Shown: positions 5,266 to 64,000 of the stretch, in pieces
Position numbering within the stretch: position 1 is the stretch's first letter
Layout: the number at the start of each line of letters is the position of its first letter
Assembly: GCF_963921235.1 (NCBI RefSeq)
Contig: NC_086104.1
Span: 12,710,001-12,774,000 of the forward strand
Direction of reading: 5' to 3'
DNA length: 64,000 nucleotides
Source: Mobula hypostoma
Taxonomy: Eukaryota
Notes under the pieces: model-generated
Told to the model about the DNA's origin: nothing
Databases searched by the model: none
Seen by the model: only the letters and a program-made list of their open reading frames with translations
Made by a program: the position numbers and the translations under genes

Positions 5266-5317
5266 CCGCACTCCGAGCAGATTCTGTTCATTTCAGCGTT
5301 TGAATCCGAGGGAAGAA

Positions 5318-5692: not shown

Positions 5693-5724
5693 AGAGTGCC
5701 CAGAAAACACACCGGAAACCCAAC

Positions 5725-5764
5725 GGCTCTTTTAAGAGCCACTCACAGATTCATTGAAAGAGTT
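5725..5764 (+). terminator. Histone 3' stem-loop plus HDE (U7 snRNP site)
   Basis: GGCTCTTTTAAGAGCC at 5725-5740; purine-rich AAAGAGTT at 5757-5764. Confidence 0.95.
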
Positions 5765-6518: not shown

Positions 6519-7164
<646 letters not shown>

Positions 7165-7194
7165 AGCGACAGATTCTGAACCCGGTGACCCAAA

Positions 7195-7235
7195 GGCTCT
7201 TTTAAGAGCCACTCACAGTGTCTGTGAAAGGGCTG
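7195..7235 (+). terminator. Histone stem-loop plus HDE
   Basis: GGCTCTTTTAAGAGCC at 7195-7210; AAAGGGCTG at 7227-7235. Confidence 0.95.
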
Positions 7236-10353: not shown

Positions 10354-10389
10354 GGTCGAAGTTTCGGGCTGAGACCCTTCATCAGGACT
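10354..10389 (-). ncRNA. Minimal hammerhead ribozyme, mutated stem III
   Basis: AGTC-CTGATGA-A-GGGTCTCAGCCC-GAAAC-TTC-GACC. Confidence 0.55.
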
Positions 10390-12023: not shown

Positions 12024-12059
12024 AGTCCTGACGAAGGGTCTCAGCCTGAAACGTCGACT
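12024..12059 (+). ncRNA. Minimal type-I hammerhead ribozyme
   Basis: AGTC-CTGACGA-A-GGGTCTCAGCCT-GAAAC-GTC-GACT; predicted cleavage after 12055. Confidence 0.75.
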
Positions 12060-13319
12060 GTACCTCTTCCTAGAGATGCTGCCTGGCCTGCTGCGTTCAC
12101 CAGCAACTTTGATGTGTGTTGCTTGAATTTCTAGCATCTGCAGAATTCCTGTTGTTTGGAGTCGTTTGGCGGTTTTATACAGGATCGACCTTATCGAGCA
12201 TTCATTCAGAAGTGGTGACCTGTATCTGAGATAATTCCTGCAAGAGCAGGGAAGTTTGTGCAGTGTCCACTCACCAGAAAAAGGTCAGTTCCTTTACGCT
12301 GTTTTATTTCCTTCGTCGTGAACTCTTTGGAGAATCAGCAGTAACATCACGTCTTCGAAGAAATCCGTTTCCGGAGAAATCTCTCTTTATTGACTGTGTA
12401 AATCACTTGGACTTTCAAATTTACCATTTTAAGACTGGGTTCGAATTTACCACTTTAAGAACTGTTTTCGCATTTACCCTTTTAAGAACTGTTCCAGAGT
12501 TGCTGTATAGCAGTCAACTTACGGTTAAGTTGGTCGTTGAATATTTTTCGCTATTATTGAGCAGAGTTTGGTAAATGTTTTTGTTTGTTTATAAAACCTG
12601 CCTCGTTTCATAATTCATTGTTGCCGATCACGTGACAAAAAGAATGTTTCATCTTTAACTTTGTCTTTTGGAGATCAGTTCATCTTCTACTCACTTAACT
12701 ATTCACAGTAACAGAAATTTTGTCAGAGCCCTGGAGTCTGTTGCAGAACAGAGGGTCCTCCAGATAGAATTCCAGAAAGTGCCAACATAGGCGAACAAGG
12801 TGGTGCTTGACTTCATTTGCCTTCTTTAGAGTCAGGCCAGTGAGTACAGGAGTCGGGATGTTATGTTTAAACTGTACAAGATGTCAGTGGAATTGTACTT
12901 GGGATATTGTATGCAGTTCTAGTCACCTAGCTACAGGAACAAGGTGATGTAGCTGGAGAGGGTGCAGGAAACATTCACAAAGATGTTTCTCTGGGACTGG
13001 AGGGCTTGAATTACAAGGACAGATAGGGCAGGCTGGGTCTGTTTCTCTGGAGCACAAAGTGATGGGTTTATATATTAATTCATGGATAGATAAATATATA
13101 TTACTCTGTAGCCTCACACTCTACAATGTCCTCCAGTCCCTGTGACCCTCTGACATGTCTCTTCTCCGACATCCTTAGTCCCTTTTGAATCCTCACTTCC
13201 TGTTTTCGATTGGAGCACTGTGCTCTGTCGTTTCCCATATGCGTTGGTGATTTGGATGAGAATATAAATGGCAAAAATAATAAATTTGCAGAAGTTCACC
13301 CTCCTGAAAGATGCACTAA

Positions 13320-16394: not shown

Positions 16395-17654
16395 GTGCGT
16401 AAATGGATTCAGGTGCCTGAAACAATGATCACAATATTTAAAACCCATCTCGATAAGTTCATGGAGGGGAGAGGTTTAGATGGCTATGGGTGAAATGCAG
16501 ACAGGTGGGACTAGCTCGCAGTGTATATAGGGCCAAAGTGCCTGTTTCTGTGCCGAATGACGCGATGATTATGAGGTTTATGTCTTCAATTCAGAGAATT
16601 AATTTCCATCCAGCTTCCTGTATCAGAACTACTTTGAAACTTGCCTATTTCCGCTCCTCAGCACTAAAGTCCTCATCTACCTCCCTGCATTACATACTAT
16701 CAATGTACTGACACAGAAAGCTCTCCTGGATGCACTTTAAAAATTCCACCTCTAATCTTTCCACATAAATCAGATCCTATGAATGTGAATGTGATCCTAT
16801 GAATCCCATTAATATGAATGCCTGGCAACTGCAACTCCATTCAGCAGATCTCTTCCTCAATCTCCCACCAACAGTTTGGTGGTCTGCAGTACAATGCCAG
16901 CAACATGAATGTGCTGTTGTTTCTAAAATCTGTCCATGTGGCCTCGTGTAAAGAACATTCTGAGACACCCACCCTCGTTCCTGCAGTGATGGTCTCCCCC
17001 ATTAATCTTGCAATATCATCATTTCCTCTTTTCCATCCCTCCCTCTCTGTGGAATTCATTGCCATAGGCAGCTGTGGAGGCCAAGACTTTATGTATATTT
17101 AAGACAGAGGTTGATATATTCTTGATTGATCAGGACATGAATGGATACGGGGGGGGGGGGGAGCGCCGGGTGTAGAGAAGGGAAGAGATTGGGGTTGTGA
17201 AGAAAAATAGATCAGCCATGATGAAATAGCACTGCACTTGATGGGCCAAATGGCAAAATTCTGCTCCTTTATCTTATGGTCTTATGGTCTAACATCGCAT
17301 TTGTCTCCCTCACCTCCAACTCAATCTGTAAATTAACCTTTAGGGAATTGAGTACGAGGACTCCCAAATTCCTTTGCTTCTCAGTTTTTAATTTTTTTTC
17401 TCTCAATTTAGAAAATAGTCAACCCTTCCATTTATTCTATCAAAGTGCAGGACCATACACTTCCCGACACTGTATTCCATCTGCTATTTCTTTGTCCATC
17501 GTCCTAATATTTCTAAATCCTTCTGTAGCTTCTCTAACCTAGTTTCCTCAAAACTATCTGCCCCTCCGCCTATCTTCGGATCGTCCACGAACTTCGCGCT
17601 GATATCCGATCATAGGATTTATCGGAATAAATCTGATGAGTGATTCGTATCTCA

Positions 17655-17725
17655 GTCAACCAATGGAAATGCTCGACCTCTCCATTCTTCATTAGCATAC
17701 TGCTTACAGCACTGCCTATTTAAAC
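17655..17725 (+). promoter_or_regulatory. H2B copy 2 promoter
   Basis: CCAAT at 17660; octamer-like ATTAGCAT at 17691-17698; TATTTAAA at 17717-17724. Confidence 0.75.
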
Positions 17726-17776
17726 CGCGCTCCGAGAGATGTTTGTTCATTTTGCCGTTTGAATCCGAGTGAAGAA

Positions 17777-18151
17777 ATGCCCGAGCAGCAGAAATCCGCT
17801 CCCAAGAAGGGCGCCAAGAAAGCTTTGCCCAAACCAGCGGGCAAGTCTGGCAAGAAACGCAGGAGGGTGAGGAAGGAGAGTTACTCCATCTATATCTACA
17901 AAGTGATGAAGCAGGTTCACCCCGACACCGGCATCTCCTCCAAGGCCATGAGCATCATGAACTCGTTCGTGAGCGATATTTTCGAGCGCATCGCGGGCGA
18001 GGCTTCCCGGCTGGCCCATTATAACAAGCGATCGACCATCAGCTCCCGGGAGATCCAGACTGCCGTGCGCCTGCTGCTGCCTGGGGAGCTGGCCAAGCAC
18101 GCCGTGTCGGAAGGGACAAAGGCGGTGACCAAGTACACCAGCTCCAAGTGA
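17777..18151 (+). CDS. H2B: Histone H2B copy 2 (protein identical to copy 1)
   Basis: Same translation; two synonymous differences seen. Confidence 0.98.
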
Positions 18152-18183
18152 AGAGTGCCCAGAAAACACACCGGAAACCCAAC

Positions 18184-18225
18184 GGCTCTTTTAAGAGCCA
18201 CTCACAGATTCACTGAAAGAGTTAC
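18184..18225 (+). terminator. Histone stem-loop plus HDE
   Basis: GGCTCTTTTAAGAGCC at 18184-18199; AAAGAGTT downstream. Confidence 0.95.
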
Positions 18226-19079
18226 TACTCCCGCCCACACGGAAGCATAATTCCGTCCTTCGCCTCTCTGTTGGTTATTAGAAACTGTATCTCCCACATA
18301 TCCAACAATTACGAAAACATTACAAATAACCACTGACAAAACAGGAAACTCACGGTCATTAAAAGTTAGAGATATTTTGCCATTGAATGAAGTAATCATC
18401 AAAGTTCAATGAGCTAATTGAAATTCTATTCATGTTAATCGGCCGACTGTCCGGTATTATCCTGAGGTCTTTGTTCCATTCTTCCTATAGCGCGAACACG
18501 GAACCATCATCCCCTCTTTAGCCTTACTGTCGGTCATTACAAATTGTGTATTTGTGAAGCGGATAGTTGCTGAATCTGATTTAATAGCTGTGGGGAATCT
18601 GATTGATTAATTTCTGTCCCATTTTGACAGCTTATGCGAATCCCATTTCAGTGCCAGACATGAACTGGTTCACGGGTCTTCTCACAGATACCTTTTGTCT
18701 GCGAAGTAATTTGTTAAAACTGCAGGTTAAACCAGTCGCAGTCTGAGAAGACCGGTGTTTTCATATTTGATCAGGTTATAATGACCGGCCGCGAACAGAA
18801 GCGAAGTTTTCGCTCAGAGCGTTTATCACTTGAAAGAAATCTGCGAATTAATTTCCTAGACATTTTTTCCGTATTACTTACACGCGTATTAAATGTGTCG
18901 GACTTCATTAATGGGATGTATGCGGAGACCAACATCTGGAATATTTTGATTTTAGGTTAGGTTTGAACAAAGGATTTTTTTGGCGGGCTTTTTCAAATTT
19001 CTTTTATAGGAAATAAACGGTTAGTTTCCGCGCTTCTGCTATTGCTGTCTCTTGATAGGTGAATAAAGCTGCTCCCTGA

Positions 19080-19604
<525 letters not shown>

Positions 19605-19634
19605 AGCGACAGATTCTGAACCCGGTGACCCAAA

Positions 19635-19675
19635 GGCTCTTTTAAGAGCCACTCACAGTGTCTGAAAGGGCTGTC
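19635..19675 (+). terminator. Histone stem-loop plus HDE
   Basis: GGCTCTTTTAAGAGCC at 19635-19650; AAAGGGCTG downstream. Confidence 0.95.
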
Positions 19676-21285
19676 TACGGTTACCATGGGTGCGGGTGAA
19701 AGGGCTCAAATTTATATTTGATTGTTTACCGTGTGGTTAATTGAAATTTCCTCCTGTTGCGAAGCTCACAGGATGAACAGTCGGGTTGCAGTCCGAAATG
19801 ATGGAGGTGGGTCCCCCACTGATGTTGGAATTGAATGTTTTTTATAGGAGTCCAGCAGTGCGATCGATTACATGTGGCCGCCCGTTCCAGAGGAAATATG
19901 GGGGGGTGGGTGTGAGGTGTTGGGCAAGAGAGGTCCGTGCCAAGGGAGGTGAGTGACCGCAGGGTGGTGATGAAGCATTCTCTGCTTGAGGAGAGGCCTG
20001 ACCATCATGACAGGTGTCATTTCATTGGCTCTTCACTGAACCCTGGAACATCTTATGACTGAGAGGCTAAATAGAGCGCCAATCCATACTTAAGATTGCT
20101 GTCGTCGCCTGCAGGTTCAGGAGCAGTTAGTACTCCTCAACCAGAGGGGATAACTGCACTTTTACGGAGTCTACAACTGATGTTCGCGATACTTATTGTT
20201 TTCTAATTTATTATTCTTACTTTTTTTTTCTCTTTTTGTACTTATACAGTTTGTCTTTTGCAGATTGTTTTGTCTTTGTTGCGAGTTTTCACTGGTTCTG
20301 TTGTGTTTCTTTGTATTTACCGGCATTGCTTTGGAACAAAGTGATACAATAGAATCAGTGAAAAATTACACACAAGCACAGAGAGATCATTCTGCAAAAG
20401 ACAAACTGCAAATATGTATAAGTAAGTGTGTATGGTGACACATACAGTATCTATCGATAATGAATTTATTTTGAAATTTGAACTTAACGTTTCAGCCCAC
20501 AGGTCCTTCATCAGATAACATTGTTACCTTTCAATACTTAGAGAACAAAGTTCGAATTGAATCTAAGTACGAAGTGTCACCATAAACAACCCTACTAAAC
20601 TGAACTATTATTTTATCATTTTCAACTTCCCTGTCCTTTGAAACATGGATATTTGGAATTATCGCCCTTTTTTTTCCTGTCCTGGTGTTAAATTCTATTT
20701 CCCTCCCCCAGTGGTAAATTTGACATTGAAATGTGTCTGAGAAGCCCCTGTGTGCAGTAAGTAATTGCCCGCTGTGGCTCCTCTGATCGAAAGCTCACTT
20801 TGCTCTGACCCCCAGGCTGTGGACAGCAGATAATGTCACTTGACACCTCTTTGTGGAACTATTTGTGTGTTGGCATCCCTGATGTTGTTCCCGCGGCTAT
20901 GGGCTGGTGCAGTCTCGGGTGGTGGCAATGTGATGTAATGAGCTTCTTCTGTGGTTTGCAGGTTGATGTGGAGAGATGGAGAAGACAGCGACTGGATCAG
21001 ATTATCTAAACCGTGCTCTCTGCTATTGCCCATGTTTCCCATTCTCATCCTTAAGCTCACATCCCTTCTTGTTCCTCACCCCCTCACTCTTGCTGTAACC
21101 TCCTCCCATCCTGCAAACTCTCACTGCTCTGCTCTCCTCCATCTGTGGCCTCTTATATATTGTCGCATTATTTTTTTTAGACTTGTGACCTGTTACCAGA
21201 CGCACTGCTGGAGAAGGGGTTGTGCATTTTGATTATCAAATATATTGATAAGTTGAATGAGAATATATGTAGGGTGATTACTAAA

Positions 21286-22059
21286 GTCAAGTCAAGTTTA
21301 TTGTCATTTCGACCATAAGCTGCTGGTACAGTACGCAGTAAAAACGAAACAACATTCCTCCAGGACCATGGTGCTACATGAAACAACACAAAACTACATT
21401 AGACTGTGAGACAGCACAAGGCTACACTAGACTACGTGAAACAAACATAAAAGCTACACTAGACTACAGACCTGCACAGGAGTACATAAAGTGCACAAAA
21501 CAGTGCAGGGCAGTACAATAATTAATAAACAAGACAGTAGAGGACAAATTACAATATAATAATAAATGATGTAGCTGTCAGTCTAGACTGAGTATTGAGG
21601 AGTCTGATGGCTTGGGAGAAGAAACTGTTGCACAGTCTGGTCGTGAGAGCCCGAATGCTTCGGTACCTTTTGCCAGATGGCAGGAGGGAGAAGAGTTTGT
21701 ATGAGGGGTGCGTGGGGTCCTTCACAATACTGTTAGCTTTGCGGCTGCAGCGTGTGGCGTAAATGTCTGTAATAACAGGAAGAGAGACCCCGATGACCTT
21801 CTCAGCCGACCTCACTATCCGCTGCAGGGTCTTGCGATCCGAGATGGTGCAATTCCCGAACCAGGCAGGGACGCAGCTGCTCAGGATGCTCTCAATACAT
21901 CCTCTGTAGAATGCGGTGAGGATGGTGGTGGGAGATGGACTTTTCTCAGCCTTTGCAGAAAGTAGAGACGCTGCTGGGCTTTTTTGGCTATGGAGCTGGT
22001 GTTGAGGGACCAGGTGAGATTCTCTGCCAGGTGAACACCAAGAGATTTGGTGCTCTTTG
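21286..22059 (-). mobile_element. Rex1/Babar-like LINE 3' fragment with (CTTGA)n tail
   Basis: LGVHLAENLTWS, KKAQQRLYFL, FYRGCIESIL; flanked by TAAA; absent from the paralogous segment near 53430. Confidence 0.85.
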
Positions 22060-22924
22060 TAAATTTGTAAATGACACCAAAATTGATGATATAGTGGACA
22101 GTGAAGAAGGTTGTCCAAGTTACAATAGAACATACATGAACTTTGAAAATAGGCAAGGAGGTGACAGATGAAATTTAATTTGGACAAATGCTGAATTTTG
22201 CATTTTAGTCAGTTAAAGCAAGGCAAAACATTACACAGTAAGTGGCAGGGCCCTGGAGATTGTTGCAGAACAGAGGGTCCTCCTGAGAGAATTCCAGAAA
22301 GTGGCAACTTAGTGAAGAAAGGGCTTGACTTCATTTGCCTTCACTAATCAGGCCAGTAATTACAGGAGTCGGGTGGTAATGTTACAACTGTACAAGATAC
22401 TGGTGTGATTGCACTTGGGATATTGTGGACAGTTCTGGTCACCTAGCTACAGGAACGAGGTGATGTAGCTGGAGAGGTTGCTGGAAACATTCACAAAGAT
22501 GTTACTCTGGGACTGGAGGGCTTGAGTTACAAAGACAGGCTGGGTCTGTTTCTCTGGAGCACAAGAAGGGATGGGTTTATATATTAAATCATGGATGGAT
22601 AGATAAATAAATAAATATAGAGAAAATTTAACTTCCTCTATAGCCTCACACTCTGTAACTTTCTCCAGTCCATGTGACCTTCTGAAGTGTCTGCTCTCCA
22701 ACATCCTTGGTCCCTTTTGAGTATTCACTTACGTTTTTAGATTGGAGAACTGTGCTCTGTTGTTTCTCATATGCATTGGTGATTTTGATGAGGATGTAAA
22801 TGGCAAAAATAATAAATTTGCAGACACCAAACTGGTGGTAGAGTGGACAGTTCTGAATGGTGGGATATAGATTACTTAGGAATGAGGCAAGGTGATGGCA
22901 GATGGAATTTAATTCATCAAATAC

Positions 22925-36670: not shown

Positions 36671-37869
36671 TCCCATCCCCCTGCCATATTAGTTTAAGCC
36701 ACTCCCAACAGCTCTAGTAAACCTGCCCACAAGAATTTTTGTCCCCAATATTGGTCCGTAGTTCCTCTTGACCAACAGTACTGTATATAGGATCAGGTCA
36801 GGCAAGCAAGGACTTCCTTGCTTGGAGCACAGGAGACTGATGGGTGACATTATTGAGCTGTAGATAAGGTGTATGCGTAGTCTTTTTTCCCCCAGGGTAA
36901 TGGATTGAGAAACTAGGGGACATAATTTTAAGGTGAGAGGGGAAAGATTTAAATAGGACCTCAAGAACAGCTTACTGACACAAACACATGGAACAAGCTG
37001 CCAGAGAAAATGGTTGAGGCAGACACAATAAAAGCATTTAAATGATTTTGGAGAAGTACATAGGAAAGATTTGGGATATGGGTCAAATTCAGGCAATGGG
37101 AAATGGGACGAGGTTAGATGGGAGTTTTGGCCTGCATGGAGGAGATGGGCTAAAGGGCCTGTTTCTGTTCTATATTACTGAACAACTCTGTCTCTTGTTA
37201 CCAAGCTATGTTTTGGGTTCTGTGGCATTAACATTTTGGATCAGTCTTCTATGTGAATCTTACTGAATTCCATCTGAACCACACAACCCACACTGCCCTT
37301 ATCAATCTATTTGGTAATCTCTTCAAATAATTATCTCAATTAAATTAGTCAGATGGGTCTCCTACTAACCTCTCCGTACTGACCATCACTGATCCATCCC
37401 TCCCATTCCAAGTACAAATTATCTTTATAGCAATTTCCCCACTATAATTTGAAAATTGCTGACTTATAATTCTCTGTCTTGTCCCTATTACGGTTCTGGA
37501 ATGAAGATCCCACAAATGCTGTCCACCAGTCAGCTGACACCTTACCTGTGACCAGGGAAGGTTTAAATCAAAGACTCTTCTCAGACCCGACCCACCCACC
37601 GCCTCACAGAAAGAGCAGATCTGGTGTCACTGACCCGAAATGTTAACTCTCTATTTCCCAAATGTGCAATTAAACTTAAAACAAACGGATGGACGAAGTA
37701 ACTTTATGCCAATTACGCCACGGGACTGAAACCGCTGAGAACACAAACCAGAGAAAATCTGCAGACGTTGGAAATACGAGCAACACCAACTGGGCGGCAC
37801 CGGATCATGAATAGTGCGGTTGCTACGTTACTGTCTGGGGATTAAATTCCAACCCTTGTGGCGAGCGCA

Positions 37870-38040
37870 CTAACCCCATGAGAGAGCTACCTTATTCACC
37901 AACGAACAGAGGGCAGCAAGGAAAGCGCGGAAAGAAACTGTCAGTTAGTTCCCCGGATGACGAAAATTTGAAAAGCCCGCCGAAAAAGTTGGCTATAGTT
38001 CCGTAGTCAGCGAAAACATACGGTGACTCATTAATTCGCT
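37870..38040 (-). promoter_or_regulatory. Orphan H2A-promoter homologue
   Basis: GGCGGGCTTTTCAAATTT...TTTCCGCGCTT...TTGCTG...TTGGTGAATAA is collinear with 6533-6640. Confidence 0.6.
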
Positions 38041-42014: not shown

Positions 42015-42170
42015 CGCTCTTCTTTCAGTTAGTCCTGACGAAGGGTCTCGGCCCGAAACGTCGACTGTACCTCTTCCTAGAGATGCTGCCTGGCCTGCTG
42101 CGTTCCCCAGCAACTTTGATGTGTGTTGCTTGAAATTCCAGCATCTGCAGATTTCCTCGTGTTTGCGTTT
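42015..42170 (+). mobile_element. PLE terminal-repeat fragment
   Basis: Nearly identical to 12008-12155. Confidence 0.8.
42031..42066 (+). ncRNA. Intact minimal type-I hammerhead ribozyme
   Basis: Stem I AGTC/GACT; core CTGACGA; stem II GGGT/GCCC with CTCG loop; GAAAC-GTC; predicted cleavage after C42062. Confidence 0.8.
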
Positions 42171-51495: not shown

Positions 51496-53099
51496 AAGAT
51501 GACAAACATACACTCAGTGGCCACTTTATTAAGTACAGGATTTATCTAATAAAATGGCTTCTGAATGCAGGTCTAAAGTGAGAGTACTAGGTTCAATGGG
51601 ATATGAGGGGTAATTTTCTCAGACAAATAATAATTAGCATTGGAATGAGTAGCCAGAGTGGTGATGGAGGCAGGAGGGGTGGTGGTGAGATCTCCGTTCG
51701 GTAACACTCCCCAGGACATTGTCATTCTCTGTCCCATGCTGTCCTGCTTTAACTTCCCAAAATAGAGTCACTGATTTATATAGCTTTGAAATAGGCCCAA
51801 CTCATCCCTATCAATGAGTTGCATGCCTGAACTAGACCCAGCTACCTGCATTAGGCCCAAATCTCTCTCAAGCCTTCATATCAAAATGTCTTTTAAATAT
51901 TGTAATTATACCCATATCTACAGCATTCTCTGCCAAGTTATTCCACATACATCAAATATTCAGAGTGTTAATGTTGCCCCTCAGGTCATGTTAAATAATT
52001 ATCCTCTCACAATAAATTTATGTCATTTACCTATGGACCTCCCTACCCTGGGGAAAAAGGACTATGGCCATCCACACCTCATGGATTTATAAACCATTCT
52101 AAGATCACCCCTCAGTCTCCTACACCCCAGCGGAAACAATCTCAGCCTATCCAATCTCCTCTTATAGGTCAAACTCTCCGGTAGCACTCACAAGCTTGTG
52201 AATCGTTCAGAGGGACAGGAGGGATTTACACAGTGTGAGGCTACAGAGGGATTTAAAAAGTCCCTCGTGATTTAATATATGTCTTTAAATCTGCCCCTCA
52301 TCTTCTGTGCTCCAGAACAAACAGTCCCAGCCTATCCAGTCTCCCCTTGTAACCCAAGCTCTCCCTCTTAGTCACATCTTTGAGAATGTTTCCTGCACCC
52401 TCTTCAGCTACATCACATAGTTCCTGTAGCTGGGTGACCAGAACTGTCCACGATAACCCTGCACACAATGCATATGGGAAACGACAGAGCACAGTGCTCC
52501 GATCTGAAACAGGAAGTGAGGATTCAAAACGAGCCAAGGGTGTAGGAGAGCAGACATTTCAGAGGGTCACAGGGACTGGAGGAGGTTACAGATTGAGAGG
52601 CTACAGGGGAATTTATATTTATCTATGATTATTTATTTATTATCCATGATTTAACATACCTCTAAACCCTGTGCTCCAGAGAAACAGACCTAACCTGTCC
52701 TTGTAACTCAAGTCCTCCAGTCCCAGAGGACCATCTTTGTGAATATTTCCAGCAACCTCTCCAGCCACATCACCCCGTTCCAGAACTGTCCACAATACCC
52801 CAAGTGCAATCTCGCCAATGTCTTGTACAGCTGTAACATTACATCCCGACTCCTGCATTTACTGGCCTGACTAATGAAGGCAAATGAAGTCAAGCACTTT
52901 CTTCACTACCTTGTCCACCAATGTTGACATTTTCTGGAATTCTACCCAGAGGACCTTCTACTCCGCAATAATCTCCAGGGCCCTGCCACTTACCGTGTAA
53001 TGTTTCACCCTGGTTTAACTGACTAAAATGCAATATTTGGCATTTGTCTGAATTAAATTACAACTATCATTTCCTTGCTCACTTTTGCAGTGGATGTAT

Positions 53100-53353
53100 A
53101 AAAGGCATCCGTTAGTCTTGCGAGACCATGGATCTGCGCCTGGCAAGTCTTCACTCTCCAGAGCACAAGCCTGGTCAAGGTCGTATGGAAGACCAGCAGT
53201 TGCCCATGCTGCAAGTCTCCCCTCTCCACGACACCAATGTTGTCCAAGGGAAGGGCATTAGGACCCATACAGCTTGGCACCAGTGTTGTCGCAGAGCAAT
53301 GTGTGATTAAGTGCCTTGCTCAAGGACACAACATGTTGCCTTGGCTAGGGCAA
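53100..53353. mobile_element. Short retroposon insertion (possibly RTE-related)
   Basis: 9-bp TSD TGGATGTAT at 53091-53099 / 53354-53362; absent from the paralogous segment near 22138. Confidence 0.7.
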
Positions 53354-53471
53354 TGGATGTATGTTCTATTGTAACTAGACAACCTTCTTCACTGTCCACT
53401 ATACCATCAATTTTGGTGTCATCTGCAAATTTAGTAACCGCCTTACATATATTCTCATCCAATTTATCAAT

Positions 53472-54204
53472 TGTTACATACCAGCAGCAATAGATCACAA
53501 ATGAGTCAGGTTTTAATGTCAAAACCACTATCTTTATTCATATTTACTCAAAATATAAAAGATTAAATGAAATAAACAAAAGTTAACAGTGTTATGCTTG
53601 TATATGTGTGTGTATATATGTAGCTCCCCAAACTATCAAGTTAGGAACGATTTTTAAAGTCTTAAGATTCAGACGGTGAAGTAGAAAGGTTCAGTAATCC
53701 ATGGAATAGACAATGGGAGAGAGATTTGTAATCCAGAATATAATGTAGAGGGAAGGCGATTATGTCGAATTCCACAAATTCCACACTGGTATAACAAAAT
53801 AGCAGACGTTGAGTCGTTCCGAAATCCACCTGGAGATATCACCAAATGACAGTCACAGGAAAATCGTCTTCAATTGGTTACCACTTAACACCCTGATTCC
53901 AGGTAAGGGCCAGCAAGAGTGATACCACGGGATACTCCAACAAATCCACACATATGGATTATACGAAGTGACCATCACATATTCGTTGTGCACTGCGTAC
54001 CGATGATCACCCCAATCTTTTGCGCATAGGAGAGTTCCAAACCATAGCAGTGACAAGCTGAAGTTCCAACAGCTTTTCCAGTCTCTCTCTCTGTAGGTTT
54101 AAGTCAGCAGCCGGCTGCCGCAGCTTGTGACTAACGTCATAGTACGCCTCACTCAGGCGCTCTTAAAGTAACACTCACAGTACGAGCCTGCGTCTCTCGT
54201 AACA
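53472..54204 (-). mobile_element. Solo LTR (733 bp), related to the 45061 LTR
   Basis: TGTTAC...GTAACA termini; TSD TCAAT; shares aataaagatagtggtttt...aaaacctgactca in reverse orientation. Confidence 0.88.
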
Positions 54205-54841
54205 TCAATATATTTGACAAACAAAATACACAGCACCTTCCCCAGCAGTACGTCTGGTCACAGGCCATCAGTAAAAAAAGTAATGAGAGTATCCAAAAGA
54301 GGCCACAGAGGGAGAAGAGCAGAACTGTGAGAGTTTACCAGGGCGGGAGGAGGTTACATAAAGAATAAGTGGTTGAGAAACAAGCGGGGAATGTGAGGCT
54401 AAGGCTGGGAATGATCCTGAGGCAGGGAGCTGGTGCAGTAGGTACTGTTCCCCAGGTGGGAAGCAAGAAGAGAAGAAGCTAATGCCCACAGTGGAGTTGT
54501 AGTCAGGCCCACCCGTCCTCTCACACAGCCACATGGCATCGGCACAGAGCAAAGCGCAGCTCGTCTGATCCAGTCGCTCTCTTCTCCATCTGTCCACATC
54601 TACCTGCAAACCATGAACGAAGCCCATTACATCACCTCGCTGCTGCCCAAGGCCACACCAGCTCGTTGCCACAGGAACAGCAGCAGTGATGACAACACAC
54701 AACTGGCTCCACAAAGTGGCGGTGCGCCGCAGCACGTCTTGTCCGCAGCCTGGGAGGCAGGGCAGCGTGAGATTTCAATTAGAAGAGCTGCAGTAGGCAG
54801 TCACTGTGCACAACACCTTCACGTGGACATTTCAATGTCAA

Positions 54842-55323
54842 CACAAAATACTCTGCAGATGCTGGGGTCAAAGCAACACTCACAACACGCTGGAGGAACT
54901 CAGCAGGTCGGGCAGCATCCGTGGAAACGATCAGTCAACGTTTTGGGCCGGAACCCTTCGTCAGGACTGAAGAGGGAAGGGGCAGAGGCCCTATAAAGAA
55001 GGTGGAGGGAGGGTGGGAAGGAGAAGGCTGGTAGGTTCCAGGTGAAAAACCAGTAAGGGGAAAGATAAAGGGATGAGGGAAGGGAGGCAGGGAGGTGATA
55101 GGCAGGAAAGGTGAAGAAAGAATAGGGGAAAACACAATGGGTAGTAGAAGGAGGCGGAACCAAGAGGGAGGAGGTAGGCAGCTGGGGGAGGGGGCAGAGT
55201 GAGATAGGGATAGAGGAAGGGAGGGGCAGGGAACTACCGGAAGTTGGAGAATTCTATGTTCATACCAAAGGGCTGGAGACTACCTAGACGGTATATGAGG
55301 TGTTGCTCCTCCAATCTGAGTTT
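54842..55323 (-). mobile_element. PLE 3' fragment with decayed hammerhead (54933-54968)
   Basis: TSD AATGTCAA at 54834-54841 / 55324-55331; translation includes LEEQHLIYRLGSLQP, matching the PLE ORF end at 63648-63884. Confidence 0.8.
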
Positions 55324-55599
55324 AATGTCAAGTTTGCTGCTGGGGAACGGAAATGGAATTTGGCACCAGGAAGGAAAAGGGCGGTAATTCCAATCATCCG
55401 TGCTTTAAAAGACAGAAAAGTAAAATAGATATAAAGAAAATTAAGCTTAATTTATATATTATGTTTTATTTTGTATTTGCACAGATGTCTTCTTTTGCAC
55501 TATGGTTACTGGTCAGTCTGTGTTTGTTTATAGTTTTTCATTTATTCAATTGTTTATTCATTAATGTTTATTCTAATATTTATCCTAATTCCTTGCCAA

Positions 55600-56540
55600 A
55601 GTAGATTTGCATCATCATGAGACTCACTTTCTTGTGGGCATTCACAGCAATTACAAAGAAACACAACAGAATCAATGAAAACCCACACAACTAATAGACA
55701 AAAAGCAACCAACATGCAAAAACAAAAAAAGAGAAAAATTATTAATAAATAAGCAATAGATATTGAGAACATGAGCTGTGGAGTCCTTAAAAGTGTAGTT
55801 TTCCCCTTGGTTCAAGAGCCTGATGGTTGAGGGGTAATAACTGTTCCAGAACCAGGTGGTGTGAGTCCTGAGGCTCCTGTACTTTCTTCCTGATTACAGC
55901 AGCGAGAAGGGAGCATGGCCTGGGTGTTGGGAGTCTTTGATGATGGATGCTGCTTTCCTGTGACAGGATTCCTTGTAAGTGTGCTCAGTGGTGGGGAGAT
56001 ATTTACCTGTGTTGGACTGAGCCATATCCAGTAAATTTTGTCGCCTTTTGCGTTCAAGGGCATCGGCGTTTCCAAACTATGCTGATATAATAACGGTGAG
56101 GAATTTATAGCTGCTGATCCTCTCCACCTCTGATTACTTGATGAAGATTGGCTCGTGGACCTCCAGTTTCTTCCTCCTGAAGTCAATAATCATCTCTTGG
56201 CTGACACTGAGTGAGAGGTTGTTGTTGTGCCACCACTCAGCCAGATTTTCAGTCTCTGTCCTACATGTGAATTTGTCACCACCTTTGATTCGGTCAACGA
56301 CAGTGGCCTTAAATGTGGCATTGGAGATGTACTTGGCCTTGCAGTCACAAGTATAAAGTGAGTAGAGCCGGATGGTTTCCGTGGGTTCACACTCCTGAAG
56401 GATGCACTTACGTCAGCCTCAAAGACTGAAATCACAGAGTCATCGAGGGCTGTGGGAGCCTGTGAAGGGGTCTCTATGCTTTGAGCTCATCTAGGAGTGA
56501 AACCTTGTTGTCACTTATGTCGCCTGGTTGCTGCTTGACA
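55600..56540 (-). mobile_element. Degraded Rex1/Babar-like LINE pieces
   Basis: ISVFEADVSASFRSVNPRK and a 3' UTR similar to other copies in the window. Confidence 0.55.
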
Positions 56541-57212: not shown

Positions 57213-59610
57213 GACCATAAGGTAGAGGAGCAGAATTAGTCCATTTGGCCCATCGAGTCTGTTCCGCCATTTCATCATGGCTGATCTGTTTTTCGTCTCA
57301 GCCCCAGTCTTCTGCCTTCTCTCTGTATCTCTTCTTGTCCTGACTAATCAAGTGAGGTCTTAGCAGTGCTTTATAAAGCCTCAGCATTACATCCCTGCCT
57401 TTATATTCTAGTCTACTTGAAATGAACGACCACAGCACCAACTCAACATGCAAATTAACCTTTAGGGAACCGTGCACAAGGGCTTCCAAGTTCCTTGGCA
57501 CCTCAGATTTTTGATTTTCTCTCCATTTAGAAAATAGTCTATCCTTTTATTTCTTCTACCAAAGAGCATAACCATGCACTTGTTGACATTGTATTCCATC
57601 TGTCACTTCTTTGTCCATTCTCCTAATCTGTCTAAATCCTTCTGTAGTCGCTCCACATCTTCAAAACTACCTGCCTCTCCACCTGTCTTTGTATTGTCTG
57701 CAAACTTTGCAACAGAGCCTTCAATTCCATCACCACGTCATTGACATATAATATAACAAGAATCAGTCCCAACACAGCCTCCTGTGGGACATCAGTAGTC
57801 ACCAACAGCCAACCAGAAAAAGCTCCCTTTATTCCCTCTCTTTGTCTCCTACCAATCAGCAATGCTCTTTCCATGTTAGTATATTTCTTGTAATACCATG
57901 TGCTCTTAACTTATTAAGCAGCCTTATATGTGGCACCTTGTCAAAGGTCTTCTGAAAATCCAAGTATACAACAACTGATTCTCCTTTGTCTATCCTGCTT
58001 GTTATTTCTTCAAAGAATTCCAACAGATTTGTCAAGCAAGATTTTCCCATAAGGAAACCATACTGACTATGGCCTATGTTATCATGTGCCTCCAAGTACA
58101 CCGAAACCACATCCTTAACAATCGACTCCAACATCTTCCCAACCACTAAGGTTAGTCTAACTGCCCTATTGTTCTTCTTTTGCCTCTTCCTTCTTGAAAT
58201 TTTCCAGAACCATTCCAGAATCTAGTGATTCTTGAAAGATCATTACTAATGCCTCCACAATCTCTTCAGAACCTCTTTCAGAACCCTGAGGTGTACACCA
58301 TCTGGTCCAGGTGACTTATCTACCTTAAGACCTTACAATTTCCCAAGAACCTTCTCCCTAGTAATGTCAACTTTCACACTTCTGATCCCTGACAATCTCA
58401 AACTTCCACCACACTATGTCTTCCACAATGAAGACTGATGCAAAATACTTATTCAGTTCACCCACCATTTCCTTGTCCCCGATTACTCCCTCAGCATAAT
58501 TTTCCAATGGTCCGATATCCACTTTTGCCTTTCTTTTACATTTCATGTATCTGAAAATTTGTGTTGGTATCCTCCTTAATATTATTGGCTAGCTTCCTTT
58601 CATATTCCATCTTTTCCTTCCTAATTACTTCCTATTTTCCTTCAGTTGTTTTTTTTAGAAAGTTCCCAATCCTTAAACTTCATGCTAATTTTTGCTCTAT
58701 TATGTGCCCTCTCTTTGGCTTTTATGTTGGCGTTGACTTCTCTTGTTAGCCAAGATTGTGTCATCTTGCCTTTAGAATACTTCTTCCTCTTTGGGATGTA
58801 TATATCTTGTGCCTTCCAAATTGCTTCCAGAAACTCCAGCCATAGCTCTCTGCCATCATCCCTATCAGTGTTATTTTCCAAACAACTCTGGCCAACTCTT
58901 CTCTCATGCCTCTATAATACTGATAGACCTGACTTCAGCTTCTACTCAAATGTCAGGGTGAGTTTGACCATACTATGATCACTTGCCACTAGGGTTTCTT
59001 TTTACCTTAAACTCTAATCAATTATGGTTCATTGCACAACACCCAATCCAGAATAGTTGATCCCTTAGTGAGATCAACTACGAGCTGCTGTAAAAAGCCA
59101 TTGTGCAGGCATTCTAGAAATTTCCCCCCTTGGAATCCAGCACCAACCTGATTTTCCCAATCTATCTGCATATTGAAATTCCCCATTGCAAAATTGCCCT
59201 TTTGGCATGCATTTTCTATCCCCCATTGTAATTTGTAGACTGTACATAACTCCCATCATGATTTTTTTTACACTTGCAATTCCTTAACTTTACCCACAGC
59301 GATTCAATACACAAAATGTATCCTTGGATGGTAATCTCCCAACTACAGTCTTCTTTCAGCCACTGTTCAGTGATGCCCACATCACACATGCCAATCTGCA
59401 ACTGTGCTACAAGTTCATATACCTTAATCATTATACGGTGCACATTCAAATATAACACTGTCAGTCCTGTATTCGCCCTTAGTTACCTTTATCATCCTGT
59501 TGACTGCAAATTTTCCATACCATCAGCCTCTCCTTGCTAGGAGTCTCACTGTACATCACCTTTGTTTGTAACCCAGCTACCTCATTCTCAGCACTCTAGT
59601 TTCATCCCCC
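57213..59610 (-). mobile_element. Degraded CR1 ORF2 through 3' end
   Basis: GITEQWL, KSCLTNLLEFFEE, DFQKTFDKVPH, YKALLRPH. Confidence 0.8.
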
Positions 59611-60086
59611 TGCAGTTTATCGGGGAGACAGGAGGTCTCACGGGCTTCCCACATCCCACACACAAGTACAAAACATCACAGGAGTCCCGATGAAGGTGTC
59701 TCGGTTGGAAACGCCGACTGTTTACTCTGTTCAATAAATGTTGCCTGGCCTGCTAAGTTCTTCTAGCATTTTGTGAGGTACACAGTGCGATCAATGTAAG
59801 ATTAAAATTGACCCCAACCATTACTCCTGAGACTGGTCGAAATCCGGTGGCCAGTGACACATACCGGTATCTCAGCAGCCCCCACCCCACATCGTACTTC
59901 GTCTGGAACAGGCTGTTTGAAATCAATGCTGGATATTAAGCTTTATGCACTACAAAAGACACGGTTGGGGTCGGTCATTCAACGCCGACAGTTGGTGAGG
60001 GACCCAACTGTGGGCTTCATTAAAACAACATACATCGAAGTTGCTGGTGAACGCAGCAGGCCAGGCAGCATCTCTAGGAAGATTAC

Positions 60087-60122
60087 AGTCGACGTTTCGG
60101 GCCGAGAGCCTTCGTCAGGACT
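60087..60122 (-). ncRNA. Minimal hammerhead ribozyme (core intact, one stem II mismatch)
   Basis: AGTC-CTGACGA-A-GGCTCTCGGCCC-GAAAC-GTC-GACT. Confidence 0.75.
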
Positions 60123-60377
60123 AACTGAAGGAAGAGCTAGTAAGAGATTTGAAAGTGGGAGGGGGAGGGGAAGATCCAAAATGATAGGAGAAGACAGGAG
60201 GGGGAGGAATGGAGCCAAGAGCTGGACAGGCAATTGGCAAAAGGGATATGACAGGATCATGGGACAGGAGACCCAGGGAGAAGGAAAAGGGGGAGGGAGG
60301 GGAAAAACCCCAGAGGATGGGCAAGAGGTATAGTGAGAGGGACAGAGGGAGAAAAAGGAGAGTGAGAGAAAGAATGT

Positions 60378-63300
60378 CTCTCTTTAAATCTTTTTATTGA
60401 ATAAGTATACAAAAAGGTAAGCCATATAGGCACTAATACACTGTTAGCATATAATAAAATTACAGAAGATATTAATACAAAAAAATACTACAAACAATGT
60501 AATTTAAACATAACGTACCAAGGTAACATAATAGTATACTAATTTTTATATATATATCAATAGAGAAAAGGGAAAAAAAAACCCACCGTGCAACTAACTA
60601 AAAGCAAAGCAAAGCAATGGGCTAACTTGAAACCAAACAGAGTTTAAAAACTTAAAATCACATCCTCAATCCCGACCTCCATTAAAAACAGTAAAAAAAA
60701 ACAAGAAGGGTATATATTACATTAAATGAAAATATTGAATAAAAGATCTCCAGGTCTGTTCAAATTTAAATGAGGAGTCATAAAGATTGCTTCTAATTTT
60801 CTCCAAATTCAAGCATAATATCGTCTGAGAAAACCAAAAAAAGGTAGATGGAGCATTAAGCTCTTTCCAATGTTGTAAGATACATCTTTTCACCATTAAA
60901 GTAAGAAATGCAATCATTCTACGGGCTGAAGGGGAGAGATTACTGGAAATTTTAGGTAGTCCAAAGATAGCAGTAATAGGGTGAGGAGAGATATCTATAT
61001 TCAATACCTTGGAGATAATATTAAAGATGTCTCTCCAAAATGTTTCCAGAGTAGGGCAAGACCAAAACATATGAGTTAAAGAGGCTATCTGCCCCGGACA
61101 TCTATCACAAAAAGGATTAATATGAGAATAAAAGCGAGCTAATTTATCTTTGGACATATGTGCTCTATGAACAACTTTAAATTGAATTAGGGAATGTTTA
61201 GCACAGACAGAGGAAGTACTGACTAATTGTAAAATCTGCCCCCAGTCATCCACAGAAATGATAAACCCCAATTCCTGTTCCCAATCTACCCTAATCTTAT
61301 CAAATGGAACTTTTCTAAGTTTCATAATAATATTATAAATCATAGCCGATGCACCTTTCTGACATGGATTAAGGTTAATTATAGTATCTAAAATGTATGT
61401 AGGAGGAAGCATTGGAAAGGAAGAAAGTATAGTACTTGGGAAATTTCTAACTTGTAGATATCTAAAAAAATGTATTCTTGATAAGTTATATTTATTAGAT
61501 AATTGTTCAAAAGCCATAAGGGAACCATCTAAAAATAAATCCAAAAACCGTGAAATACCCTTGGTCTTCCAAATTTGAAAAGCACGATCTGTAAAAGAGG
61601 GAGGAAAAAAATATGTTACCTAAAATAGGAATCGCTAACCCAAATTGATTAAGATCAAAAAATTTTCTGAATTGAAACCAAATACGTAAGGTATATTTAA
61701 CTATCGGGTTAGACACCTGTTTAAGGCGTTTCAAATCAAAAGGAAGAGAGGAACCTAAAATAGAGCCAAGTGTATAACCCTGAACAGATTGTAATTCCAA
61801 TGCTACCCATTTAGGAATGGATAGTATATCCTGGTCAAGTAACCAGAATTTCATATGTCAAATATTAATTGCCCAATAATAAAATCTAAAGTTAGGTAAT
61901 GCTAAGCCTCCATCTCTCTTAGCTTTCTGTAAATGTATTTTACCCAGTCTCGGGTTTTTATTTTGCCAAATAAATGAAGAAATTTTAGAGTCGACTTTGT
62001 CAAAAAAAGATTTTGGAACAAAGATTGGTAATGCCTGAAATATATATAAAAATTTTGGCAAAAAAAACATCTTAACTTCATTAATACGACCAATCAAAGT
62101 TAAATATAAAGGAAACCATTTAGATGAAAGTTGAATAATATGGTCTATTAATGGTAAAAAATTAATCTTAAATAAATCTTTGTATTTACAAGTAATTTTA
62201 ATCCCAAGATATGAAAAATAATTATTAATCAATTTAAATGGAAAGTTAAGATATAAGGGAAGTTGTTTATTAATCGGGAAAAGTTCACTCTTACTAAGAT
62301 TTAATTTTTAACCTGAAAAAAGACCAAATTGTGCTAATAGCTCTAAAACAGCCGGGATGGATTTTTGGGGATTAGAAATATATAAAAGTAAGTCATCAGC
62401 ATAGAGTGATATTTTATGGGACTTTAAGCCCCGAGTTATCCCAGTAATATTTGGAGATTCTCGAATGGCAATTGCAAGAGGTTCTAATGCAATATCAAAT
62501 AATAAAGGACTAAGAAGACAACCTTGTCGAGTACCTTGACTCGGACTTTGTTAACTTTATGAATGAACAGATTGATCTTTTTTTTACAATTAACTATACG
62601 GAGGATATTTCTGTGAACATTCTTTGGGATACTTTTAAAGCTTATATTCCTGGTCAGATTATCTCGTATTCTGCTGCTTTGAGGAAGAAGCTGAAGCAGG
62701 AGGAGTTGGTAATTGTGGACAAGATTAAGGAAATTGATAAGAAATGTGTTATAGCTCCTTCTGAGGAATTATATAAACAAAGAACTGAACTTCAAATGGA
62801 ACACAGTTTATTACTTTCGTCCTCGATTATAAACCAATTAAAGAAAACAAGAAGTGAATTTTATGTACACAGTGACAAAATTGGCAAACTGTTGGCTAAT
62901 CAACTGAAGTCTAATTATGCTAAATCTCAAATTAATCAGATTTATAACCAAAATGACCGACTGATACTTGATCATGTGGGGATTAATCAAACCTTCTGTG
63001 ATTTTTATTCTTCCTTATATCAATCAGAGTCTCCTCGAGATTCTAAATATATGAATGATTTTTTAGATAATCTAGACTTCCCTGAGATTTCACAGGATAT
63101 GTCTTCTATGTTAGATACTCCCATTACCACGGATGAGATTAAGAATGTTATTTTCTCTATGAATTTGGGGAAAGCTCCTGGCCCTGATGGGTTTACCGTA
63201 GAATTTTATAAATGTTTCGCTCCCTCATTAATCCCTTGGTTCTGCAGGGTTTCTGAGGCTTCATTAAAACTTGGTAAACTTCCCGAATCTTTCAATAGAG

Positions 63301-63583
63301 CGTCAATTTCTTTAATATTAAAGAAGGATAAAGATCCTGCTCAATGTGCATCTTACAGACCAATATCTTTATTAAATGTTGATTCTAAAGTTTTTTCTAA
63401 GTCATTAGCAAATAGATTAGAAAAAGTACTTCCTTCTATTATTTCGGAAGACCAAACGGGTTTTATTAAAGGTCGTTACTCTTTTTATAATATTCGCACA
63501 CTGTTAAATATTGTTTATACTCCCTCACAAAATGTTCCTGAGTGTGTTATCTCTTTAGAGGCTGAGAAAGCTTTTGATAGAGT
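60378..63583. mobile_element. L1-clade LINE, 5'-truncated with 5' inversion
   Basis: - strand 60378-62536 has GTRQGCPLSP, LYADD, YLGI, GGLALP and the C..C..H..C motif; + strand 62537-63586 has WDTFKAY, KAPGPDGF, DQTGF, EKAFDRVE; TSD AGAAAGAATGT at 60367-60377 / 63584-63594. Confidence 0.92.
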
Positions 63584-63869
63584 AGAAAGAATGTGTGTAT
63601 AAAAATAAATAACGGATACCCCATCCGTTAAAGGGGGAGGTGGGGCATTAGCGGAAGTTAGAGAAGTCAATGTTCGTGCCATCAGGTTGGAGGCTACCCA
63701 GACGGAATATAAGGTGTTGTTCCTCCAACCCGAGTGTGGCTTCATCTTCACAGTAGCGGAGGCCGTGGATAGACATATCAGAATGGGAATGGGATGTGGA
63801 ATTAAAATGTGTGGCCACTGGGAGATCCTGCTTTCTCTGGCGGACAGAGCGGAGGAGTTTATTAACCCA

Positions 63870-64000
63870 CCGGCAATAATCCAATCAGGGAGCTGCCTTG
63901 TTCACCAATCAAGAGACAGCAACTGCAGAAGCGCGGAAACTAGCCGCTTAGTCTCCTAAATAATCCGCAATTTGAAACAGCCCGCCAAAAATCCTTTGTT
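63870..64000 (-). promoter_or_regulatory. Orphan H2A-promoter homologue
   Basis: Reverse complement aacaaaggatttttggcgggctgtttcaaatt...agtttccgcgcttctgc..ttgctgtctcttgattggtgaa...gctccctgattgga matches 6519-6644 and 18966-19084. Confidence 0.85.

What the first reader, a model, noticed from the sequence alone, without database searches (positions are those of the whole stretch)
59780..64000. Ghost H2A locus: promoter and 3' flank retained, gene replaced by a Penelope-like insertion
On the - strand, 64000-63870 is a clear copy of the H2A promoter with both CCAAT boxes intact. 59970-59780 matches the flank just after H2A-1 at 7260-7485 (ccccaaccgYgtct, ccagtctc...atgg.tgg.gtc.att, ttacaYtga), and 60010-59975 resembles 19808-19838 after H2A-2. 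The interval where the TATA region, CDS and stem-loop should be holds only a PLE 3' fragment later split by an L1. The further-downstream landmark (55450-52440) is also present in the right order and orientation. Inference: gene loss by PLE-associated deletion, leaving a histone promoter pointing into a retroelement in the sense of its hammerhead. Prediction: a minus-strand histone gene (H2B or H3) ends ~0.8 kb beyond the window.
Basis: partly seen in the sequence, partly recalled or inferred. Interest (0 to 1): 0.75.

Follow-up and report, generated by a model that had tools for sequence, protein, structure and literature searches.

The report
Dead H2A locus overwritten by retroelements
In a ray histone gene cluster, one old copy of the H2A gene has lost about 0.7 kb (core promoter, coding sequence and 3' stem-loop), and a truncated Penelope-like retroelement now sits there; this is ordinary gene decay, not a new kind of element.

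Summary
On the - strand, 64000-63876 is 83-84% identical to the block 136-265 bp upstream of both intact H2A genes. 60018-59770 is a diverged but significant homologue of the H2A 3' flank. Nine collinear blocks continue for 11 kb against the H2A-2 unit. Nothing between promoter and flank resembles H2A coding sequence or a histone stem-loop.

The gap holds about 0.64 kb of a 5'-truncated Penelope-like element (PLE): the end of its GIY-YIG region plus a tail with a minimal hammerhead core. A 3.2-kb L1-like LINE later split this PLE. That LINE has an 11-bp target-site duplication (TSD) and a twin-priming 5' inversion.

The PLE has no TSD. A second PLE 5 kb away has a clean 11-bp TSD against an empty site in the paralogue. 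So insertion-coupled deletion is a reasonable mechanism, but it is not proven.

No RNA contig covers the unique parts. A second species label carries the same flank junctions. The prediction of a histone gene beyond the window could not be tested. The scan's notes list other dead or orphan H2A loci in this genome. Interest is low.

The parts
63876..64000 (-). Relic of the distal H2A promoter. It has two E2F-like GC motifs and two inverted CCAAT boxes, and runs off the window end.
   Evidence: 83-84% identity to 6519-6648 and 18966-19088, which lie at -265 to -136 from the H2A start codons.
63648..63872 (-). 5'-truncated PLE: the last ~72 codons of the ORF (C-terminal end of the GIY-YIG endonuclease region) plus the stop codon.
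   Evidence: 230 hits at E<=1e-3. The match falls at the C-terminal end of proteins that carry GIY-YIG, and in one case also RVT_1.
63584..63647 (-). Proximal PLE 3' untranslated part, ending in the upstream copy of the LINE target-site duplication (63594-63584).
   Evidence: Collinear with a second PLE copy at 55321-55219. Contig joints skip 3217 bases with 11 shared letters.
62556..63583 (+). Inverted 5' segment of the L1-like LINE. It codes on the + strand and contains RVT_1 positions 2-83.
   Evidence: Pfam RVT_1 E 1.3e-11. Its outer end abuts the TSD, as the twin-priming model expects.
60378..62555 (-). Direct 3' segment of the same LINE: RVT_1 from position 116, zf-RVT, and the 3' end.
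   Evidence: Pfam RVT_1 116-176 (E 2.5e-10) and zf-RVT (E 2.8e-6). The downstream TSD copy lies at 60377-60367.
60026..60377 (-). PLE tail (pseudo-LTR part) with a minimal hammerhead core at 60118-60091. It ends without the optional 30-40 bp extension.
   Evidence: 87-93% identity to four other tail copies in the window. The core pattern matches 5 times against 0.02 expected. End comparison.
59770..60018 (-). Relic of the H2A 3' flank. In H2A-2 coordinates it starts roughly 85-130 bp past the stem-loop.
   Evidence: It behaves as single-copy in DNA contigs (one 312-bp contig in run X1).
59683..59780 (+). 3' end of another PLE on the opposite strand. It bounds the flank relic on its far side.
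   Evidence: Matches PLE tails at 12024-12098, 42031-42105 and others.
54831..55331 (-). Second 5'-truncated PLE with an 11-bp TSD (55331-55321 and 54841-54831). It sits in the backbone shared with the H2A-2 unit.
   Evidence: Filled site here against an empty site at 20720-20730. ORF end and tail matches.
52466..55818 (-). Collinear downstream backbone shared with the H2A-2 unit (20133-22778), and in part with the H2A-1 unit (12721-13246).

Best explanation
This is the wreck of a third, inverted H2A unit in a ray histone cluster.

Shown: an old segmental duplication produced a unit collinear with the H2A-2 unit. In this copy about 0.67-0.71 kb is missing, from 135 bp upstream of the ATG to roughly 85-130 bp past the stem-loop. 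Exactly in its place lies about 0.64 kb of a 5'-truncated Penelope-like element, in the same orientation as the lost gene. An L1-like LINE later inserted into that PLE, with an 11-bp TSD and a twin-priming 5' inversion.

Inferred: the PLE nicked an AT-rich site in the H2A 3' flank and reverse-transcribed from its normal internal start site. Its truncated cDNA end was then joined about 0.7 kb upstream rather than next to the nick. That removed the gene in one step, as in L1 insertion-mediated deletion.

What remains of the promoter is only the distal activating block. It is most likely decaying neutrally and silent.
For: 1. Promoter and flank homology, in the right order and orientation.
2. No H2A coding sequence or stem-loop in between.
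3. The downstream backbone is paralogous by descent. A second PLE there is a filled site with an 11-bp TSD, against an empty site in the H2A-2 unit.
4. PLE identity: the 72-aa fragment matches the C-terminal ends of proteins with GIY-YIG and RVT_1, and the tail carries the minimal hammerhead core (PMC4209133).
5. The PLE's 3' end coincides with that of another copy lacking the optional 30-40 bp tail. The literature describes that tail as present in only a fraction of copies because there are two RT start sites (PMC11167929, PMC8557442). So the 3' junction looks like a primary integration junction.
6. There is no TSD around this PLE. The longest word shared by the two 40-nt flanks is 5 nt.
7. 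Little or no unassigned sequence lies between host homology and PLE homology at either junction: at most about 20 nt at the 5' junction and about 7 nt at the 3' junction.
8. The same flank junctions are present at 96.5% identity in a contig from a second species label. The event is therefore fixed and not an assembly artefact.
Against: 1. The deletion is inferred from paralogues, not from an orthologous empty site.
2. A single-step event cannot be told apart from recombination between two PLEs, or from separate deletion and insertion.
3. The exact 5' truncation point of the PLE is uncertain (63857-63876), because no longer copy of this subfamily was available.
4. Insertion-coupled target deletion is documented for L1 (PMC1920257, PMC12016303). 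I found no paper documenting it for PLEs.
5. The RNA evidence is weak: it rests on contigs only, from runs merely guessed to be RNA.
Confidence: 0.5

Rival explanations
1. Two-step loss by recombination between two PLEs. Two same-orientation PLE copies inserted independently, one in the H2A promoter and one in the 3' flank. Unequal recombination between them then deleted the gene and left one chimeric PLE without matching TSDs.
For: PLE tails are dense here: at least 7 tail fragments in 64 kb. A chimeric element would also lack a TSD. A PLE 3' end follows a second H2A-promoter relic at about 37815-37765, so PLEs have landed near H2A promoters more than once.
Against: It needs two insertions of the same subfamily within 0.7 kb, plus a recombination between very short homologous stretches (under 0.64 kb). 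Nothing in the sequence marks a chimeric join. It is less parsimonious than one event.
Confidence: 0.15
2. Unrelated events. H2A was lost by an ordinary deletion, before or after the PLE arrived, and the PLE merely sits at or next to the scar. Alternatively, PLE cDNA was captured during repair of a double-strand break, without use of its endonuclease.
For: The locus is heavily hit by transposable elements. About 8 kb of insertions separate blocks that lie 1 kb apart in the H2A-2 unit. Other dead or orphan H2A loci are noted elsewhere in this genome. Endonuclease-independent insertion at breaks is known for L1 (PMC1920257).
Against: Both deletion breakpoints would have to coincide, to within a few bases, with the two ends of the PLE. 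The PLE 3' end is a normal family terminus next to an AT-rich site, as expected for endonuclease-dependent integration (PMC11167929).
Confidence: 0.25
3. The retained promoter block is functional. It is kept by selection as an S-phase enhancer for a neighbouring histone gene, or as a driver of PLE/hammerhead RNA.
For: Both CCAAT boxes and both GC-rich E2F-like motifs are intact. Identity is higher (84%) than in the neighbouring backbone (62-80%).
Against: The intact promoters are themselves constrained. So 84% is about what neutral decay of the ghost lineage alone would give, if pairwise neutral divergence is about 23%. By my own estimate, ten box positions surviving at about 0.84 per site has a chance near 0.17. 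The core promoter is deleted. No RNA contig lies on the promoter bin or the unique flank, and none of three RNA-labelled runs holds the flank's words. The ghost's hammerhead helix II carries a G-to-C change relative to the other four copies.
Confidence: 0.07

Closest known systems
L1 insertion-mediated deletion (retrotransposition with loss of target DNA instead of a TSD)
   Same: A 5'-truncated retroelement with a normal 3' junction and no TSD, with adjacent target DNA missing on the side of the element's 5' end. Target-site deletions are a recognised minority outcome for L1 (4% of calls in PMC12016303; also discussed in PMC1920257).
   Different: The element here is a PLE, which has a GIY-YIG endonuclease and starts reverse transcription internally. 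It is not an L1. The deletion is inferred from paralogues rather than from an empty orthologous site.
Canonical endonuclease-positive Penelope-like elements (Penelope/Poseidon/Neptune type)
   Same: The C-terminal end of the ORF follows a GIY-YIG domain in its homologues. The tail carries a minimal type-I hammerhead core. The copy shows frequent 5' truncation and the optional 30-40 bp tail, and it sits next to an AT-rich target (PMC4209133, PMC8557442, PMC11167929).
   Different: Only about 0.64 kb of the 3' end is present. No RT region lies in this copy. The hammerhead is not detected by Rfam models and carries a helix II substitution.
Histone pseudogenes and orphan histone promoters in vertebrate histone clusters
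   Same: A paralogous unit within a replication-dependent histone cluster has lost its gene. Similar dead or orphan H2A loci are noted elsewhere in this genome.
   Different: The coding sequence here is not decayed but entirely absent. Its exact place is taken by a retroelement.
L1 twin-priming 5' inversion
   Same: There is an 11-bp TSD. The inverted 5' piece has its outer end (RVT_1 position 83) lying just upstream, in element coordinates, of the start of the direct piece (RVT_1 position 116). About 100 bp is lost between them (the model is described in PMC12016303).
   Different: This is a ray L1-like LINE without a long poly(A) tract. Assignment to a clade (L1 or Tx1) was not tested.

Membership tests
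Replication-dependent histone H2A gene | H2A open reading frame | tested here: not met
   tblastn with the window's own H2A finds only the two intact genes and nothing in 59700-64000, even at E<=10.
Replication-dependent histone H2A gene | 3' histone stem-loop | tested here: not met
   Rfam RF00032 finds six stem-loops at the intact genes. It finds none in 59500-64000 at either the gathering or the E<=1 threshold.
Replication-dependent histone H2A gene | Family-specific upstream promoter block | tested here: met
   83-84% identity over 125-130 bp to the block at -265 to -136 of both H2A genes. The proximal 135 bp is absent.
Penelope-like element (EN+) | ORF with RT followed by a C-terminal GIY-YIG endonuclease | tested here: inconclusive
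   Only the last 72 codons are present. They align to the C-terminal ends of proteins in which Pfam finds GIY-YIG just upstream, and in one case (P0105) also RVT_1. All those Pfam scores are below the curated cut-offs. Pfam finds nothing in the fragment itself.
Penelope-like element (EN+) | Hammerhead ribozyme motif in the flanking repeat or tail | tested here: met
   The core pattern (CUGANGA, helix II, GAAAC.UC) is found at 60118-60091 and in four other tails, against 0.02 expected. This matches the minimal hammerhead architecture described for PLEs (PMC4209133). Rfam hammerhead models do not score it. Catalytic activity was not tested.
Penelope-like element (EN+) | 5' truncation and the optional 30-40 bp tail at the end of insertions | tested here: met
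   The copy is truncated within the endonuclease region. The ghost copy and the copy at 28893 end at the same point. Three other copies carry a further ~35-40 bp, as described in PMC8557442 and PMC11167929.
Retrotransposon insertion-mediated deletion | No TSD, with target DNA missing relative to the pre-insertion site | tested here: inconclusive
   There is no TSD, and 0.67-0.71 kb is missing relative to paralogous units. No orthologous empty site could be obtained. A control PLE nearby shows a normal 11-bp TSD.
L1-like LINE insertion with twin priming | RT and zf-RVT domains, TSD, and an inverted 5' segment whose outer end adjoins the direct segment in element coordinates | tested here: met
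   Pfam hits. The 11-bp TSD is seen in the sequence and in contig joints that skip 3217 bases with 11 shared letters.

The most novel reading that the evidence does not exclude
PLE integration itself can delete hundreds of bases of target DNA, and PLEs have repeatedly erased H2A genes in ray histone clusters. In this window a second, older H2A-promoter relic (37987-37875, - strand, downstream of H3) is also followed by a PLE 3' end. The scan's notes list further dead or orphan H2A loci beside conserved H2B genes. If PLE endonuclease or cDNA joining is biased towards H2A units, PLEs would be a specific force reshaping histone gene stoichiometry in this lineage.
Probability: 0.12. Interest if true: 0.45.

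Novelty: new member of a known kind. Interest (0 to 1): 0.2.

Why it matters
The finding mainly improves annotation. It explains why an H2A-type promoter block lies in a sea of retroelements. It shows that the histone cluster once held at least one more H2A unit. It also dates the loss to before the split of two sampled ray species labels.

There is a modest mechanistic point. If the one-step reading is right, this is a clean natural example of a Penelope-like element deleting its target on integration, an outcome well documented for L1 but not for PLEs. A census of PLE insertions without TSDs in ray genomes could test that.

Nothing here points to a new class of element or a new regulatory system.

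Tried and rejected
1. Seeing beyond the window end. Exact-protein look-ups of the two LINE ORFs found nothing on record. The look-up of the window's H2B protein found nine places in two large assemblies, but no DNA was returned. That call shows only that several H2B genes there have no H2A called within 10 kb.

2. Rfam. No hammerhead family scored in the region at either threshold. The single weak hit (rdlD, E 0.11) is chance.

3. Pfam on the 72-aa PLE fragment gave nothing. An earlier attempt used the wrong reading frame. The ESM Atlas gave only unnamed clusters and a GIY-YIG cluster at 0.89, which is a lead only.

4. The bacterial promoter/terminator scan is irrelevant to a vertebrate locus.

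5. RNA evidence. All available runs are contigs only, so no transcription start or strand could be read. The RNA-labelled run X10 has no contig on the promoter bin or on the unique flank. None of three RNA-labelled runs holds the flank's words. This is weak negative evidence only.

6. Selection on the ghost promoter was considered and set aside. Its 84% identity fits one-sided neutral decay.

7. The idea that the flank relic is part of a PLE composite was rejected. The two PLE tails that bound it are convergent rather than head-to-head. The stretch between them is homologous to the flanks of both intact H2A genes and is single-copy in DNA contigs.

8. Earlier findings searched with the words 'Penelope' and 'deletion' returned nothing.
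Full report
**Setting.** The window is vertebrate DNA from a ray, according to earlier notes on this genome. It carries a histone cluster:
- H2B(+) 5318-5692 and H2A(+) 6784-7164 (unit 1)
- H2B(+) 17777-18151 and H2A(+) 19224-19604 (unit 2)
- H3(-) 39189-38779
- H1(-) 41370-40735

Each gene has an Rfam histone stem-loop. Units 1 and 2 are 94% identical, but only over 2.08 kb (5175-7251 against 17635-19688). Beyond that stretch they have diverged.

**Checking the observation.**
- *Promoter.* A self-comparison shows that 63876-64000 matches 6519-6648 (83.1%) and 18966-19088 (84.3%) in reverse orientation, with E about 1e-30. These blocks lie 136-265 bp upstream of the two H2A start codons. The alignment shows both inverted CCAAT boxes and two GC-rich motifs intact in the ghost. 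From memory, those motifs resemble E2F sites. Homology ends abruptly at about 63873-63876.
- *3' flank.* 59970-59796(-) aligns to 7262-7462 with a local score of 40, against 18.8 +/- 2.2 for shuffles. Relaxed BLAST gives E 2.6e-7. A three-way alignment links it also to 19758-19911 behind H2A-2.
- *What is absent.* tblastn with the window's own H2A finds nothing in between. Rfam finds no stem-loop there.

**Is the locus a true paralogue or a set of dispersed repeats?**
- Nine collinear blocks connect 18966-22778 (unit 2) with 64000-52466.
- The strongest single piece of evidence is a filled-site/empty-site pair. Blocks 20596-20730 and 20720-20825 are contiguous in unit 2. In the ghost they are separated by 480 bp of a second 5'-truncated PLE, flanked by an 11-bp duplication of the sequence found once at 20720-20730. 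The backbone is therefore homologous by descent across an insertion site.
- The LINE fragment at 52466-53099 occurs three times in the window. Each copy lies downstream of an H2A or the ghost, in the same relative orientation.
- In DNA contigs the flank relic behaves as single-copy, with one 312-bp contig and no differences. The retroelement parts reach summed depths 10^4-10^5 times higher.

**What fills the gap.**
- *PLE coding end.* Reading the - strand from about 63872, an open frame of 72 codons ends at 63651. Against 1.8 billion representative proteins it has 230 hits at E<=1e-3. The match always falls at the extreme C-terminus. In the longer hits Pfam finds GIY-YIG immediately upstream, and in one case RVT_1 as well, though below the curated cut-offs. 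The alignment places the ghost's start just after the catalytic YIGET segment.
- *PLE tail.* 60329-60019(-) is 87-93% identical to four other tail copies in the window. It carries the hammerhead core at 60118-60091. The pattern occurs five times, against 0.02 expected. This is the minimal, helix-III-less type described for PLE flanking repeats (PMC4209133), which explains why Rfam models miss it.
- *One element, two halves.* A second PLE copy at 55329-54852 has the same order of ORF end and tail. The two halves in the ghost therefore belong to one element.

**The LINE inside the PLE.** The two PLE halves are separated by 3206 bp (63583-60378), flanked by an 11-bp direct repeat at 63594-63584 and 60377-60367. 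Contigs from other PLE copies join the two halves by skipping 3217 bases, with 11 letters shared across the joint.

The insert is an L1-like LINE in two pieces. The piece at 62556-63583 codes on the + strand and covers RVT_1 positions 2-83. The piece at 62555-60378 codes on the - strand and starts at RVT_1 position 116, followed by zf-RVT. The outer end of the inverted piece adjoins the start of the direct piece in element coordinates. That is the geometry of a twin-priming 5' inversion (model described in PMC12016303).

**Mechanism of gene loss.**
- Relative to H2A-2, about 665-712 bp is missing. Relative to H2A-1, whose flank is shorter, 613 bp is missing.
- At most about 20 nt at the 5' junction and about 7 nt at the 3' junction cannot be assigned to either host or PLE.
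- The PLE 3' end (60026) coincides with the end of another copy at 28893. Three further copies carry an extra ~35-40 bp.
- The literature describes exactly such an optional 30-40 bp tail, caused by two internal start sites of reverse transcription, and a preference for AT-rich targets (PMC11167929, PMC8557442). The 3' junction here is followed by TTTTAAT. It therefore looks like a primary integration junction.
- The 40-nt flanks share no word longer than 5 nt, so there is no TSD. The neighbouring PLE has a clean 11-bp TSD.

This is the signature known for L1 insertion-mediated deletion (PMC1920257; target-site deletions made up 4% of calls in PMC12016303). I found no paper documenting it for PLEs. 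I rate one-step PLE-coupled deletion the most likely route, at about 0.5. Recombination between two PLEs, or independent deletion and insertion, cannot be excluded without an orthologous pre-insertion site.

**Is the retained promoter active or selected?**
- Only the distal block survives. The 135 bp between it and the ATG, which must contain the transcription start, is deleted.
- Its 84% identity exceeds that of the backbone blocks (62-80%). The intact promoters are themselves constrained, so one-sided neutral decay predicts roughly this value. Ten intact CCAAT positions at about 0.84 per site is not unusual (chance about 0.17, my estimate).
- The run guessed to be RNA has no contig on the promoter bin or on the unique flank. 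None of three RNA-labelled runs of the same species label holds the flank's words. These are contigs, so this is weak negative evidence.
- The ghost's hammerhead has a G-to-C change in helix II relative to the other four copies.

**Age.** A 511-bp contig from a second species label covers 59542-60051 at 96.5% identity. It bridges the far boundary of the flank relic with ample sequence on both sides. It reaches only about 26-33 letters into the - strand PLE tail, which is at the edge of the tool's 31-letter bridging rule. The arrangement is therefore most likely fixed, predates the split of the two labels and is not an assembly artefact. The unit duplication is much older, with 20-38% divergence in the backbone.

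**Untested prediction.** No tool returned sequence beyond 64000. The window's H2B protein occurs in two large assemblies. Several of its nine listed places have no H2A called within 10 kb. That fits widespread H2A loss beside H2B, as other notes of this scan also suggest, but it does not test this locus.

**Verdict.** This is a real and well-described relic of an H2A unit whose gene has been replaced by nested retroelements. It is an ordinary outcome of transposable-element bombardment in a histone cluster. One point of modest mechanistic interest remains: possible PLE insertion-coupled deletion.

Noticed in passing
window 37875-37987 (-), with 37765-37815 (-): A second, more decayed H2A-promoter-like block (about 70% identity; GC motifs kept, CCAAT boxes degenerate) lies about 0.72 kb downstream of the H3 stem-loop. 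About 60-110 bp further on, a ~45-nt stretch is ~80% identical to the PLE terminal tail extension. No H2A gene or flank homology follows. This may be a second, independent loss of H2A next to a PLE.
   Followed up: partly
window 10267-11889: Head-to-head inverted pair of PLE-derived units, each with a ~200-250-codon ORF followed by a hammerhead tail, centred near 11205. I only used its tails for comparison.
   Followed up: no
window 19070-19076: In the intact H2A-2 promoter the first inverted CCAAT box is mutated (ATTGG to ATAGG). The ghost keeps both boxes, so box integrity is not a guide to function here.
   Followed up: no
window 7251/19688 and beyond: Units 1 and 2 are 94% identical only across 2.08 kb (H2B to just past the H2A stem-loop) and diverge sharply outside it. 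This suggests gene conversion limited to the genic core of much older duplicates.
   Followed up: partly
window 1-64000: No H4 gene was detected in the window (motif scan of six-frame translations). This stretch of the cluster holds H2B, H2A, H3 and H1 only.
   Followed up: partly
(two public assemblies, no DNA returned): The window's exact 124-aa H2B protein is encoded at nine listed places in two large assemblies. Five of the nine places show no other called gene, and hence no H2A, within 10 kb.
   Followed up: no
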